Source of the DNA: Octopus sinensis
Taxonomy: Eukaryota
NCBI RefSeq assembly: GCF_006345805.1
Contig: NC_043014.1
Span: 46,810,001-46,874,000, forward strand
Length of the DNA stretch: 64,000 nt
Reading direction: 5' to 3'
Shown here: piece after piece, positions 11,562 through 57,733 of the stretch
How positions within the stretch are numbered: position 1 is the stretch's first letter
Layout: every line of letters starts with the position of its first letter
Translations under genes and position numbers: made by a program
The notes under the pieces: model-generated
Seen by the model: the letters and a program-made list of their open reading frames with translations, nothing else
Database searches by the model: none
Told to the model about the DNA's origin: nothing

Positions 11562-11958
11562 CATCATCATCATCATCATCATCATCATCGTTTAACGTCC
11601 GTTTTCCGCGCTAGCACGGGTTGGACGGTTCGACCGGGGATCTGGGAAGCCAGAAGGCTGCACCAGGCTCCAGTCTGATCTGGCAGTGTTTCTACAGCTG
11701 GATGCCCTTCCTAACGCCAACCACTCCACGAGTGTAGTGGGTGCTTTTTACGTGCCACCTGCACAGGTGCCAGGGGGGTCTGGCATCGGCCACGATCGGT
11801 TGGTGCTTTTAACATGCCACCGGCACGGAAGCCAGCCACGGTGAGGCTGGCATCGGCCACGTTCGGATGGTGCTTTTTATGTGCCACTGGCACAGAAGCC
11901 AGTCGAGGCGGCGCTGGCAAAGGCCACATTCGGATGGTGCTTTTTATGTGCCACCGAC
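11562..11958 (-). mobile_element. RTE 3' UTR (family B) with four internal modules
   Basis: Same consensus; the module core gtgctttttaYgtgccac recurs every ~62-70 bp. Confidence 0.9.
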
Positions 11959-55715: not shown

Positions 55716-56043
55716 CTGGCTTCTGTGCCGGTTGCACGTAAAAAACACCATCCGATCGTGGCCATTGCCAGCCTCGCCTGGCCCCCGTGCCGTGGCACAT
55801 AAAAAGCACCATCCGTCCATGGCCGTTTGCCAGCTCCCTCTGGCACCTGTGCGGGTGGCACGTAAAAAGCACCCACTACACTCACGGAGTGGTTGGCATT
55901 AGGAAGGGCATCCAGCTGTAGAAACACTGCCAGATCAGACTGGGCCTGATGCAGCCTTCTAGCTTCACAGACCCCAGTTGAACCATCCAGCCCATGCTAG
56001 CATGGAAAGCGGACGCTAAATGATGAGGATAATGATGATGATG
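55716..56043 (+). mobile_element. RTE 3' UTR (family B)
   Basis: Consensus match. Confidence 0.85.
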
Positions 56044-56542
56044 ATATATAGATATATATATCCATATTCTGTTTGATAACCTGATAACATTGGTGTATCA
56101 TGTTGTATAACAACTCTACATATCCAAACGGTGTGACACACAATTTATGTATCCATCCTATGCAATATGTTATTTTTAAACCCATGCTATGTGATACACT
56201 ATTTATATATCTATTATGTGTGCATACACCATACATTCACACTGTTTGGTGTGTGTGTGTGTATGTGTGTATATATATATATATACATATATATATACAT
56301 ATACATACTGATATATATTCTTTATTCTTTTTCTAGTTTCAATCATTTGACTATGGTCATGCTGGAGCAGTGCCTTTTAGTTGAGCAAATCGATCCCAGG
56401 ACTTATTCTTTGGAAGCCTAATACTTATTCTATCAGTCTCTTTTGCCGAACCGCTAAGTTAGGGGGCGTAAACACACCAGCATTAGTTGTCAAGTGATGT
56501 TGGGATGACAAACACAGACACACAAACATATACACACACATA

Positions 56543-56605
56543 CATCATCATCATCATCATCATCGTTTAACGTCCGTTTTCCGTGCTAGCATGGGTCGGA
56601 CGGGA
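56543..56605 (-). mobile_element. RTE terminal tail (family B) joined to the tRNA-Pro half
   Basis: Minus strand GTCCGACCCATGCTAGCACGGAAAACGGACGTTAAAC(GAT)n. Confidence 0.85.
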
Positions 56606-56610
56606 ATCAG

Positions 56611-56648
56611 TGGGGCTCGTCCGGGATTCGAACCCGGGACCTCTCGCA
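56611..56648 (-). pseudogene. 3' half of tRNA-Pro (position ~38 to the 3' end), retrocopy fused to an RTE tail
   Basis: Minus strand TGCGAGAGGTCCCGGGTTCGAATCCCGGACGAGCCCCA matches the conserved eukaryotic tRNA-Pro 3' half (GCGAG-AGGTC-CCGGG-TTCRAAT-CCCGG-ACGAGCC-C). Confidence 0.85.
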
Positions 56649-56811
56649 TATATATATATATATACATATGTATACGACGGGCTTCTTTCAGCTTCCGTCT
56701 ACCAAATCCACTCACAAGGCTTTGGTTGGCTCGAGGCTATAGTAGAAGACACTTGCCCAGGGTTCCACGCAGTGGGACTGAACCCAGAACCATGTTGTTT
56801 GTAAGCAACGC

Positions 56812-56960
56812 TCCACCCCTCTTTGGTCATGAATGGCCATGAGATGTACCTAGAAGTTTCTCTCCAAGGTACAAGTCTGGGCAAGGTTGTTTATGGAAGA
56901 CCAGCAATCGTTCATGCATACCAGCTTCCCCTCTCCTTGTCACTGATGTTATCCAAGTGT
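56812..56960 (-). mobile_element. Fragment of another SINE tail (family G)
   Basis: ctgggcaaggttgtttatggaagaccagc...cataccagcttcccctctcc; recognised from recall only. Confidence 0.45.
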
Positions 56961-57029: not shown

Positions 57030-57664
57030 TGTGTGTGTGTTTGTGTGCACGTGCATACATGCATGTGTGTGTAATATCCTATATCATAAAAGAATGCAGA
57101 ACTATATTCTCTTTCCCCTCTTCCCTATTACCTCCCACATAAAACCATCAAAGCAAACATCAGCTCATTTCACCCTTGACATTTGTACTTGTGACCTTAT
57201 CTTATATATTCTGTCAATTAATTATAAAGCTTCTACCAATTAATCATTAGTTTTCTAGGTTCTAGATTGGTAGGGGAGGAGGACATGAATAGGACATGAT
57301 TTTCTTTATTTTGCTTCTATATTTGGATATTTGGACTTCATTGTATCAAATCATTTCAATATTGGGTCGTACACTTCTATCTATGTATCTATCTTCAACC
57401 TATCTATTGATCTATCTATCTATCTATCTCTCTATCAACCAACCTGTTGATATGACTATCAACTAATTTTTCTGTCTATCTATCTATCTAGCTAGCTAGC
57501 AGTCTACATACCACCTTATCTATCTGCCTATCTATCTATCTATCTCTCTCTCTCTATCTATCTTCTAGATCTATCTATCTGTCTGTCTGTCTATCTCTCT
57601 ATCTATCTATCATATCTATATATCTATCTCTATCTATCTATCTACTATCTATATCTATCTATCT

Positions 57665-57729
<65 letters not shown>

Positions 57730-57733
<4 letters not shown>

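What the first reader, a model, noticed from the sequence alone, without database searches (positions are those of the whole stretch)
56543..56648. tRNA-Pro 3' half fused to an RTE LINE tail, truncated next to the m1G37 position
Seen: the minus strand reads (TA)n-TGCGAGAGGTCCCGGGTTCGAATCCCGGACGAGCCCCA-CTGATTCCC-GTCCGACCCATGCTAGCACGGAAAACGGACGTTAAAC(GAT)n, inside a SINE-A microsatellite. Established: the first 38 nt are the conserved tRNA-Pro 3' half from position 38/39, and tRNA-Pro carries m1G37, which blocks reverse transcriptase. Inference: RTE reverse transcriptase started on its own tail, switched template to a mature tRNA-Pro and stalled at m1G37. That would be a genomic record of a tRNA modification and a snapshot of SINE birth. 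Caveats: the 3' end is one C short of discriminator plus CCA, T38 is ambiguous with the TA repeat, and a few linker nucleotides are unexplained.
Basis: partly seen in the sequence, partly recalled or inferred. Interest (0 to 1): 0.75.

Follow-up and report, generated by a model that had tools for sequence, protein, structure and literature searches.

The report
Truncated pre-tRNA-Pro fused to retroposon tail
This is a dead, one-off retrocopy in which a jumping-gene reverse transcriptase copied its own short tail and then hopped onto an unprocessed proline pre-tRNA, one of well over a hundred such accidents in this octopus-like genome; it stops just after anticodon-loop position 37, but that this stop records a tRNA methylation is only suggested, not shown.

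Summary

**What the stretch is.** On the minus strand, window 56648-56543 reads as follows:
- tRNA-Pro positions 38-73, identical to this genome's genes.
- CACTG.
- A 43-nt hairpin tail module.
- (GAT)7.

It sits in the internal microsatellite of an abundant SINE.

**The "CCA, one C short".** This is not CCA. CACTG is the gene-encoded 3' trailer of one tRNA-Pro(AGG) gene (C7:97.98 Mb). The "unexplained linker" ATTCCC belongs to a sub-variant of the tail. So the template was a primary pre-tRNA, not a mature tRNA.

**A genome-wide class.** About 100 tRNA + trailer + "tail2" chimeras were found, plus others with this tail. Some carry tRNA introns or 5S rRNA. Roughly 60% are full length.

**Not a truncated SINE copy.** The only look-alike (C14) carries a different gene's trailer, so it is an independent event.

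**m1G37.** All three 5'-truncated tRNA-Pro chimeras that retain the T arm start at T38, and about nine shorter fragments start at about position 59. That fits blocks at m1G37 and m1A58. Three points weigh against it:
- Other G37 tRNAs read through.
- Full-length copies show no I34 signature.
- Human tRNA-Pro-AGG lacks a detectable m1G37 signal.

This scan had already noted single chimeras of this class elsewhere in the genome. Verdict: a new member of a known kind.

The parts
56613..56648 (-). tRNA-Pro positions 38-73: T38, the 3' strand of the anticodon stem, the variable loop, the T arm, the 3' acceptor strand and discriminator C73
   Evidence: Identical to the genomic tRNA-Pro genes. Numbered against the gene L010.
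56608..56612 (-). CACTG, the first five nucleotides of the 3' trailer of the tRNA-Pro(AGG) gene at C7:97984989.
   Evidence: Among about 60 distinct tRNA-Pro trailers listed, only L010 has the trailer CACTGTTTTGCTTCG. The same trailer occurs in the chimeras L003, L069, L197 and L198.
56565..56607 (-). Retroposon 3' tail module ('tail1'): ATTCCC, then the hairpin GTCCG..CGGAC with an inner CCATG/CA(C)GG stem, then GTTAAAC
   Evidence: Shared with L004-L030 and with 10 copies in the window. The ATTCCC-GTCC sub-variant with loop GC(A/G)CGG is also seen in L189 and L194. For the hairpin fold, a typical copy gives z = -2.9 and this copy z = -0.9.
56543..56564 (-). (GAT)7 terminal repeat of the tail, the presumed priming end
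   Evidence: All tail1 copies end in (GAT)n.
56649..56826 (-). 5' half of the host SINE (tRNA-like head, body and (TA)n part of its internal microsatellite). This is the target, not part of the chimera. The outer boundary is approximate.
   Evidence: Compared with the uninterrupted copies in L064 and L174.
56316..56542 (-). 3' half of the host SINE ((TG)n part of the microsatellite, body and its own tail). This is the target. The outer boundary is approximate.

Best explanation
The element is a single-copy, dead-on-arrival chimeric retrocopy.

**Proposed order of events**
1. A LINE-type reverse transcriptase primed at a nick in a (TA)n microsatellite on the (GAT)n end of a short 3' tail module.
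2. It copied the ~43-nt hairpin module.
3. It then continued on the 3' end of an unprocessed pre-tRNA-Pro(AGG) transcript of the C7 gene. That transcript still carried its trailer CACTG.
4. It copied 36 more nucleotides and ended after T38, and the cDNA was joined to the target.

**Shown**
- The three parts, their identities and their order.
- The trailer origin of 'CCA'.
- That this is one of a large class of independent pre-tRNA or 5S plus tail chimeras.
- That T38 recurs as a 5' end.

**Inferred**
- The template-switch mechanism. It follows established target-primed reverse transcription models and the U6/L1 precedent.
- The order of events.
- The cause of the stop at 37/38, which stays open. 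A methylated G37 is the leading candidate, but no more than that.
For: **Trailer rather than CCA**
- L010 is an intact tRNA-Pro(AGG) gene followed by CACTGTTTTGCTTCG.
- The window has CACTG directly after C73.
- L003 has 15 nt of the same trailer. L069, L197 and L198 have CACTGT(TT).

**Linker explained**
- ATTCCC-GTCC recurs as the 5' end of tail-only copies (L194) and in a tRNA-Glu chimera (L189) with the same loop variant.
- No nucleotide is left over.

**The class**
- One search lists 97 hits of T-loop + trailer + tail2.
- The loci I fetched from them (L082-L162) cover about 20 tRNA species. Their trailers are gene-specific and end in T-runs.
- About 52 are full length and about 33 are truncated.
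- Introns are retained in L113, L162, L176, L181 and L099.
- 5S rRNA + T6 + tail1 is seen in L168.
- L002 keeps the leader and trailer of the cluster genes L043/L050.
- A34 is kept in 8 of 8 full-length A34-tRNA copies. Inosine would read as G (PMC8062790).

**Independence**
- L002, the only whole-length look-alike (88%), has the trailer ATTAATTTT of other genes.
- No further copy of the window's junction exists.

**Tail**
- Tail-only copies are very abundant and often sit in (TA)n.
Against: - No target-site duplication can be read, because the insertion lies in a microsatellite. A single insertion event is therefore inferred from the class, not shown for this copy.
- The pre-tRNA's terminal U-run is missing here: CACTG is followed directly by ATTCCC. 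Most sister chimeras keep it.
- The matching trailer is only 5 nt. A chance match to one of about 60 trailers has a probability of roughly 0.05. The argument leans on L003, L069, L197 and L198.
- The LINE whose enzyme did this was not identified.
Confidence: 0.8

Rival explanations
1. Modification footprint. The reverse transcriptase stopped because G37 of the still-trailered nuclear pre-tRNA-Pro was already N1-methylated, so the 5' end at T38 is a genomic record of m1G37. This keeps the reader's core idea and moves it from mature tRNA to pre-tRNA. It adds to the best explanation rather than replacing it.
For: - All three 5'-truncated tRNA-Pro chimeras that retain the T arm start at T38. They have different partners, flanks and trailer lengths: the window, L003 and L064.
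- No starts fall at positions 39-52.
- In other tRNAs, truncation points are scattered between 3 and 51. Three out of three at one site is unlikely by chance, roughly 1e-4.
- About 9 shorter Pro fragments start at 58-61, one nucleotide after A58. Two of them (L197, L198) carry the CACTG trailer.
- tRNA-Glu gives only 3 such fragments.
- Trm5 is nuclear in yeast and acts on intron-less tRNAs (PMC10275265). m1G blocks AMV RT (PMC8062790).
Against: - Other G37 tRNAs in the same class are full length: Leu x3, His x3, Cys and Arg-ACG. Their truncated copies start at 41 and 51, not 38.
- The templates are primary transcripts with no I34 signature.
- mim-tRNAseq found no m1G37 signal in human tRNA-Pro-AGG, and the source gene here is AGG (PMC8062790).
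- The cluster at about 59 is confounded in three ways. A59-T60 offers microhomology with (TA)n targets. My search could only detect starts at 58-61. The Leu control had background hits.
- The octopus modification status is unknown.
Confidence: 0.3
2. One reading: the template was a mature, CCA-tailed tRNA-Pro, and the junction is CCA with one C lost.
For: GAGCCCCA can be read as acceptor plus discriminator plus CA. One true CCA-ended fragment does exist elsewhere in the genome (L068).
Against: - It needs a deletion and leaves CTG unexplained.
- The trailer reading explains every base and is seen in four sister copies.
- All other chimeras of the class that I inspected carry trailers, not CCA.
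Confidence: 0.04
3. A 5'-truncated copy of an established tRNA-Pro-headed SINE family. The C14 element (L002) would be the full-length form.
For: L002 is a full tRNA-Pro plus the same tail, joined at nearly the same tail position. It is 88% identical over the whole chimera.
Against: - The linker of L002, ATTAATTTT, is the exact trailer of the cluster genes L043/L050, together with their T27 variant and leader. The window carries the C7 gene's trailer and a different tail sub-variant.
- Only these two hits span the junction.
Confidence: 0.06
4. Two unrelated insertions that happen to abut: a tailless tRNA-Pro fragment and a tail-only copy, both attracted to the same (TA)n target.
For: Tail-only copies are extremely common and favour (TA)n. 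Tailless tRNA fragments exist (L068).
Against: - The join is flush and in the same orientation, with no microsatellite left between the parts.
- The same architecture recurs about a hundred times with many tRNAs.
Confidence: 0.06

Closest known systems
U6/L1 and other small-RNA/LINE bipartite chimeric retrocopies (template switching during target-primed reverse transcription; PMC4476161, PMC2104539)
   Same: A sense-oriented Pol III transcript sits directly 5' of a 5'-truncated LINE/SINE 3' end, apparently made in one event. U6 also ends in oligo(U).
   Different: - Here the donor is a stringent-type tail (hairpin plus microsatellite repeat), not poly(A).
- The junction sits at a nearly fixed point of the tail.
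- The acceptors are unprocessed pre-tRNAs with trailers and introns.
- The numbers are high.
tRNA/LINE-1 chimeras of mammals (bioRxiv 10.1101/2025.02.02.635956)
   Same: tRNA pieces about half a molecule long are fused to a LINE, with breakpoints in the anticodon loop.
   Different: The mammalian ones are mostly 5' halves (positions 1-37), antisense to L1. They are ascribed to cleaved tRNA halves and twin priming. Here the piece is a 3' part in sense orientation and carries a gene trailer.
De novo simple SINEs made by head capture, e.g. PittSINE from TguSINE1 plus tRNA-Asp (PMC5729268), and RTE- or CR1-tailed tRNA SINEs (PMC3747384)
   Same: The full-length sister chimeras (L002, L065 and others) have exactly this architecture: a whole tRNA with A and B boxes plus a LINE-type tail.
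   Different: The window's copy lacks the 5' half and box A, so it cannot be a master copy. No amplification of any Pro chimera was seen.
Tailless retropseudogenes of truncated tRNAs (Schmitz et al. 2004, cited in PMC3747384)
   Same: Truncated tRNA retrocopies that begin in loop regions.
   Different: Those end in CCA and have no LINE tail. L068 is such a case in this genome, but the window's element is not.
Reverse-transcriptase arrest at Watson-Crick-face methylations: m1G37 in tRNA sequencing (PMC8062790), and m1A58 as the stop that ends plus-strand strong-stop DNA in retroviruses (PMC8599865)
   Same: cDNA ends one nucleotide 3' of the modified base. The Pro copies end at 38 and at about 59.
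   Different: Those are measured on known modified RNAs. Here the modification is only inferred from where genomic copies end.

Membership tests
Template-switch chimeric retrocopy (U6/L1 type) | The 5' part is a sense copy of a cellular small RNA | tested here: met
   36 of 36 nt identical to tRNA-Pro positions 38-73, plus 5 nt of a gene trailer.
Template-switch chimeric retrocopy (U6/L1 type) | The 3' part is the 3' end of a retroposon in the same orientation, including its terminal repeat | tested here: met
   Tail1 module plus (GAT)7, shared with L004-L030 and with 10 copies in the window.
Template-switch chimeric retrocopy (U6/L1 type) | Flush junction with no target DNA between the parts | tested here: met
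   CACTG is the trailer and ATTCCC is tail. No bases are unaccounted for.
Template-switch chimeric retrocopy (U6/L1 type) | One target-site duplication encloses the whole chimera | tested here: inconclusive
   The insertion lies in a (TA)n/(TG)n microsatellite, so no duplication can be read. L002 has only a weak candidate.
Template-switch chimeric retrocopy (U6/L1 type) | Independent recurrence with other RNAs or partners | tested here: met
   About 100 tail2 chimeras, several tail1 chimeras, and 5S rRNA.
Functional tRNA-derived SINE | Internal Pol III promoter with both box A and box B | tested here: not met
   The copy starts at position 38. Box A (positions 8-19) is absent.
Functional tRNA-derived SINE | Many copies sharing the same head-tail junction | tested here: not met
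   Only the window and L002 span a Pro/tail1 junction, and their linkers come from different genes.
Tailless retropseudogene of a mature tRNA | Post-transcriptional CCA at the 3' end and no retroposon tail | tested here: not met
   C73 is followed by the gene trailer CACTG and then by a tail.
RTE-clade LINE tail | The tail is identical to the 3' end of a LINE encoding an RTE-type endonuclease/reverse transcriptase | tested here: inconclusive
   - Parent copies share only about 230-400 nt and have no ORF.
- Window ORFs have no Pfam hit.
- The two RT loci I fetched lack the tail.
- Only earlier scan notes call it RTE.
RTE-clade LINE tail | Ends in a short tandem repeat rather than poly(A) | tested here: met
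   (GAT)n in all copies.
RT arrest at m1G37 | The first copied nucleotide is position 38, recurrently, in independent copies | tested here: met
   The window, L003 and L064 all start at T38.
RT arrest at m1G37 | The same stop occurs in other tRNAs that have G37 | tested here: not met
   Leu, His, Cys and Arg-ACG give 8 full-length copies. Their truncated copies start at 41, 51 and one unplaced position, and none at 38.
RT arrest at m1G37 | G37 of this tRNA, or of its precursor, is methylated in this species | not testable with these tools
   This needs tRNA sequencing or primer extension. Human Pro-AGG shows no signal (PMC8062790).

The most novel reading that the evidence does not exclude
In this genome the 5' ends of pre-tRNA retrocopies mark where a LINE reverse transcriptase met N1-methylated purines (m1G37, m1A58) already placed on nascent, still-trailered nuclear pre-tRNAs. 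Full-length copies would come from wholly unmodified transcripts. That would make the well over a hundred chimeras a genomic fossil record of the order and timing of tRNA modification. It would also be a natural high-frequency SINE-head capture system, driven by a ~45-nt tail module.
Probability: 0.25. Interest if true: 0.7.

Novelty: new member of a known kind. Interest (0 to 1): 0.42.

Why it matters
As a single locus this is an ordinary by-product of retrotransposition. The context is more useful.

- **Scale of the class.** This genome holds well over a hundred independent captures of primary Pol III transcripts (pre-tRNAs with leader, intron and trailer, and 5S rRNA) by two short retroposon tail modules, joined at nearly fixed points. 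That is a large natural data set on how SINE heads are acquired. It also points to reverse transcription taking place where nascent Pol III transcripts are.
- **Possible modification record.** If the recurrent 5' ends at positions 38 and about 59 of tRNA-Pro prove to be modification stops, genomic retrocopies could report which methylations are laid down before end-processing. That would apply to an animal with no tRNA modification data.

Tried and rejected
- **tRNA and RNA-family scans.** ARAGORN on the window found no tRNA. An Rfam scan of 56300-56950 at a permissive E-value gave only microsatellite-driven noise.
- **L002 as a SINE master copy.** I first took L002 for the full-length master of a Pro-headed SINE. 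I rejected this when its linker, T27 variant and leader matched the cluster genes L043/L050 instead.
- **'TTT + hairpin' search.** I expected all hits to be Pol III chimeras. A sample of 20 showed that most are tail-only copies or the parent element, which itself has TTT before the hairpin in one subfamily.
- **Looking for the LINE partner.**
  - Parent copies share only 230-400 nt.
  - The 8 long ORFs of the window have no Pfam family.
  - A genome-wide RVT_1 search gave 150 places.
  - The two smaller pieces I could fetch lack either tail.
  - The RTE assignment therefore stays untested.
- **Hard-stop positions 9, 20 and 26.** I looked for enrichment of truncation points just after these positions in Glu, Gly and Val. 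After careful numbering only isolated cases fit (L100 at 10, L114 at 27), so I make no claim.
- **Internal deletions.** The deletions in L082 (Leu) and L092 (Ala) around the anticodon arm could be reverse-transcriptase skips. They are anecdotes only.

Full report
**Observation**

Read on the minus strand, window 56648-56543 consists of:
- T, followed by 35 nt identical to G39-C73 of tRNA-Pro (56647-56613);
- CACTG (56612-56608);
- ATTCCC plus a GTCCG...CGGAC hairpin and GTTAAAC (56607-56565);
- (GAT)7 (56564-56543).

The flanks are the two halves of an abundant SINE that has an internal (TA)n/(TG)n microsatellite. Uninterrupted copies of that SINE are seen in L064 and L174. ARAGORN and Rfam call nothing here, as expected for half a tRNA.

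**Genome**

The window is C18:46,810,001-46,874,000 of a 2.72-Gb assembly. Its SINEs and earlier scan notes point to an octopus. I did not verify the species.

**The 'CCA' is a gene trailer**

A search with the element and a pattern search for the tRNA-Pro T arm and acceptor (78 hits) found three things:
- a large tRNA-Pro gene cluster (C1:115.62-115.82 Mb, and contig C12152);
- a few solitary genes;
- dispersed copies.

One solitary gene, L010 at C7:97984989, is an intact tRNA-Pro(AGG). It is followed by CACTGTTTTGCTTCG and further T-runs. Among about 60 distinct trailers listed, only this gene begins CACTG.

The window therefore reads ...GAGCCC + CACTG. This explains the 'one C short' problem without any deletion. 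The same trailer is present in four other dispersed copies:
- L003, 15 nt of it;
- L069, CACTGTTTT;
- L197, CACTGT;
- L198, CACTGTTT.

**The 'linker' is tail**

ATTCCC-GTCC recurs in tail copies. L194 is a tail-only copy that begins with ATTCCC. L189 is a tRNA-Glu chimera joined to the same ATTCCC start. Both share the window's unusual loop variant GC(A/G)CGG. Nothing in the element remains unexplained.

**The tail**

- The module is the 3' end of a very abundant element. There are 10 copies in this 64-kb window and none in shuffles.
- The copies I fetched share only about 230-400 nt, carry variable numbers of a ~61-nt unit and have no ORF.
- A typical copy folds into the predicted hairpin (z = -2.9). 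The window's copy has an A·C mismatch (z = -0.9).
- Tail-only copies that begin at or a few bases before the hairpin are common, and they often lie in (TA)n.
- I could not find the LINE that owns this tail. 'RTE' rests on earlier, unchecked scan notes and on the tandem-repeat end.

**A class, not a curiosity**

*Chimeras with this tail (tail1).* A pattern of T loop + 12-50 nt + tail1 hairpin found chimeras with Glu (three), Gln, His and Pro. Sampling 'TTT + hairpin' hits added:
- Met-CAT with an intron (L176);
- Lys-TTT with an intron (L181);
- 5S rRNA + T6 + hairpin (L168).

*Chimeras with a second tail (tail2).* The same pattern run with tail2 gave 97 hits. Tail2 starts (A)AATGGCGG and is a relative of the host SINE's own tail. 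I fetched 81 of these hits plus related loci.

*What the fetched loci show.*
- They cover about 20 tRNA species, including SeC.
- Each has its own trailer, usually ending in a T-run.
- About 52 start at +1 and about 33 are 5'-truncated.
- Introns are kept in L113 (Met) and L162 (Ile-TAT). L099 is truncated inside the Met intron.
- L002 keeps both the leader-like AGTT and the exact trailer ATTAATTTT of the cluster genes L043/L050, together with their T27 variant.
- All eight full-length copies of A34 tRNAs keep A at position 34 (Leu-AAG, Arg-ACG, Ser-AGA, Ile-AAT, Val-AAC and Pro-AGG three times). Inosine would be copied as G (PMC8062790).

The templates were therefore primary, largely unmodified Pol III transcripts, not mature tRNAs.

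*Junction position.* The junction lies at a nearly fixed point of each tail. This suggests either a donor RNA with a defined 5' end or a strong stop after the hairpin. That point is inference.

**Is it just a truncated SINE?**

L002 (C14) is the only other sequence that spans a Pro/tail1 junction (88% identity). Its trailer, tRNA variant and tail sub-variant all differ in ways that trace to other source genes. The two are therefore independent events. No copy shares the window's junction. The window's copy lacks box A and cannot be transcribed as a SINE.

**The stop at position 38**

Among tRNA-Pro chimeras with a retroposon partner:
- Ten are full length: L002, L065, L069, L187, L188, L061, L070, L185, L184 and possibly L031.
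- Three retain the T arm but are 5'-truncated. All three begin at T38: the window, L003 (partner tail2, 15-nt trailer) and L064 (partner the host-type SINE's head, trailer AAGCAGTAATT). Their flanks are unrelated.
- No Pro copy starts at positions 39-52.

In other tRNAs truncation points are scattered. Glu-TTC, for example, has starts at about 5, 6, 9, 10, 12, 13, 21, 21, 23, 24, 24 and 37. Three out of three at one site is therefore unlikely by chance, on the order of 1e-4.

A further search for Pro fragments that keep A59-C73 but not C56/G57 gave 12 hits with no control hits:
- Three look like T-loop insertion variants.
- Nine are truncated at 58-61.

The two of these that I could inspect (L197, L198) carry the CACTG trailer and different partners. 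The same test gave 3 hits for Glu. For Leu-AAG/TAG it gave 25 hits, of which 13 share one upstream context and 4 are expected from the control.

**How far this supports m1G37**

In favour:
- The positions are exactly one nucleotide 3' of the two classical RT-blocking methylations.
- Trm5 is nuclear in yeast and acts on intron-less tRNAs (PMC10275265).
- m1G blocks AMV RT (PMC8062790).
- m1A58 is a known RT stop (PMC8599865).

Against:
- G37 tRNAs of the same class are mostly full length: Leu three, His three, Cys and Arg-ACG. Their truncated copies start at 41 and 51.
- The full-length copies show unmodified A34.
- Human tRNA-Pro-AGG shows no m1G37 signal, while Pro-UGG does (PMC8062790).
- The cluster at about 59 is confounded by A59-T60 microhomology with (TA)n targets, since six of the nine have TAT upstream.
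- My pattern could only see starts at 58-61.

With about 3 of 13 Pro events blocked, zero of 11 for the other G37 tRNAs is only marginally surprising (about 0.06). I rate the modification reading at about 0.3. A real site-specific effect at 37/38, whether a block, a pause or a cleavage, is more likely than coincidence.

**Comparison with what is known**

The architecture and inferred mechanism match three known cases:
- bipartite chimeric retrocopies such as U6/L1 (PMC4476161);
- fungal multi-part chimeras (PMC2104539);
- the proposed route of SINE head capture (PMC5729268).

Mammalian tRNA/L1 chimeras differ. They are mostly antisense 5' halves (bioRxiv 10.1101/2025.02.02.635956). Tailless CCA-ended tRNA fragments (cited in PMC3747384) are a different class, of which L068 is an example here.

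Earlier agents of this scan had already described single pre-tRNA-Lys, pre-tRNA-Ile, tRNA-Ala, 5S and U6 chimeras in this genome. This report adds:
- the trailer identification for this locus;
- the genome-wide tally;
- the recurrent Pro end points.

**Limits**

- The genome searches score only the best candidates, and my patterns were exact. Counts are therefore lower bounds, biased towards young copies.
- 5' end positions are good to about ±2 nt, and worse next to TA repeats.
- In one search I used a run of N with a weak end anchor to see 12 nt after the trailer. I did not repeat that.

**Verdict**

The element is a dead, one-off pre-tRNA-Pro/tail chimera, a new member of a known kind. The m1G37 idea survives as an attractive but unproven lead.

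Noticed in passing
window 55725-55873 and 55992-56021 (+): A ~61-nt unit repeated 2.4 times lies just upstream of another tail1 copy. The parent element of the tail carries variable numbers of this unit (also seen at 11590, 19496, 25877 and 58345). An earlier scan note (s1-109803) describes such arrays in an RTE-type LINE 3' UTR.
   Followed up: partly
G000 C1:115.62-115.82 Mb (L032-L060, L073) and contig C12152 (L072): A large cluster of 60 or more tRNA-Pro genes (AGG, TGG, CGG) with many sequence variants. It includes head-to-head pairs separated by an AT-rich palindromic spacer (L039, L046, L048).
   Followed up: no
L189 (C4:147813461, minus): A tRNA-Glu/tail1 chimera starts at G9 and abuts, with no spacer, an inverted copy of tail2. 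This could be twin priming or a nested insertion.
   Followed up: no
L168 (C1:112110753, minus): A near full-length 5S rRNA copy followed by T6 and the tail1 hairpin. The same capture process therefore acts on 5S transcripts.
   Followed up: partly
L082 (C2:24730359) and L092 (C1:30627620): Retrocopies with internal deletions around the anticodon arm. Leu lost about 13 nt between two TAAGGC repeats. Ala-TGC has loop positions 32-38 replaced by AA. These may be reverse-transcriptase skips, or later slippage.
   Followed up: no
L068 (C7:4467002, minus): A tRNA-Pro fragment from about G53/T54 to C73, followed by a true CCA and no tail. This is a tailless retropseudogene of a mature tRNA, unlike the rest.
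   Followed up: no
L149, L150 and 7 or more further hits (C27, C28 and small contigs): One T-loop-like sequence with the trailer TTGACAAATTTTT plus tail2 occurs at least 9 times with similar TA-rich flanks. It is either an amplified mini-SINE born from such a chimera or a segmental duplication.
   Followed up: no
one search hits, e.g. C2:195336986-195390480, C28 and C2719: Thirteen copies of the tRNA-Leu 3' end (A59 to A73) share the same upstream ATT. This suggests a repeat family that contains this fragment.
   Followed up: no
L010 (C7:97984989) compared with L064 (C17:36266165): The trailer of L064, AAGCAGTAATT, equals the sequence that lies 34 nt further downstream in L010, after the T13 run. 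It is as if the source allele or paralogue lacked the CACTG...T13 segment.
   Followed up: no
window 57376-57731: A long, imperfect (TCTA)n array of about 90 units with a 59-nt higher-order period.
   Followed up: no
insertion sites of L084, L091, L106, L124, L126, L130, L142, L163, L171, L174, L190-L193, L197, L198 and the window: Tail-only copies and chimeras are very often inserted in (TA)n microsatellites, including the internal microsatellite of the host SINE (L174 and the window). This points to a strong target preference of the enzyme.
   Followed up: partly
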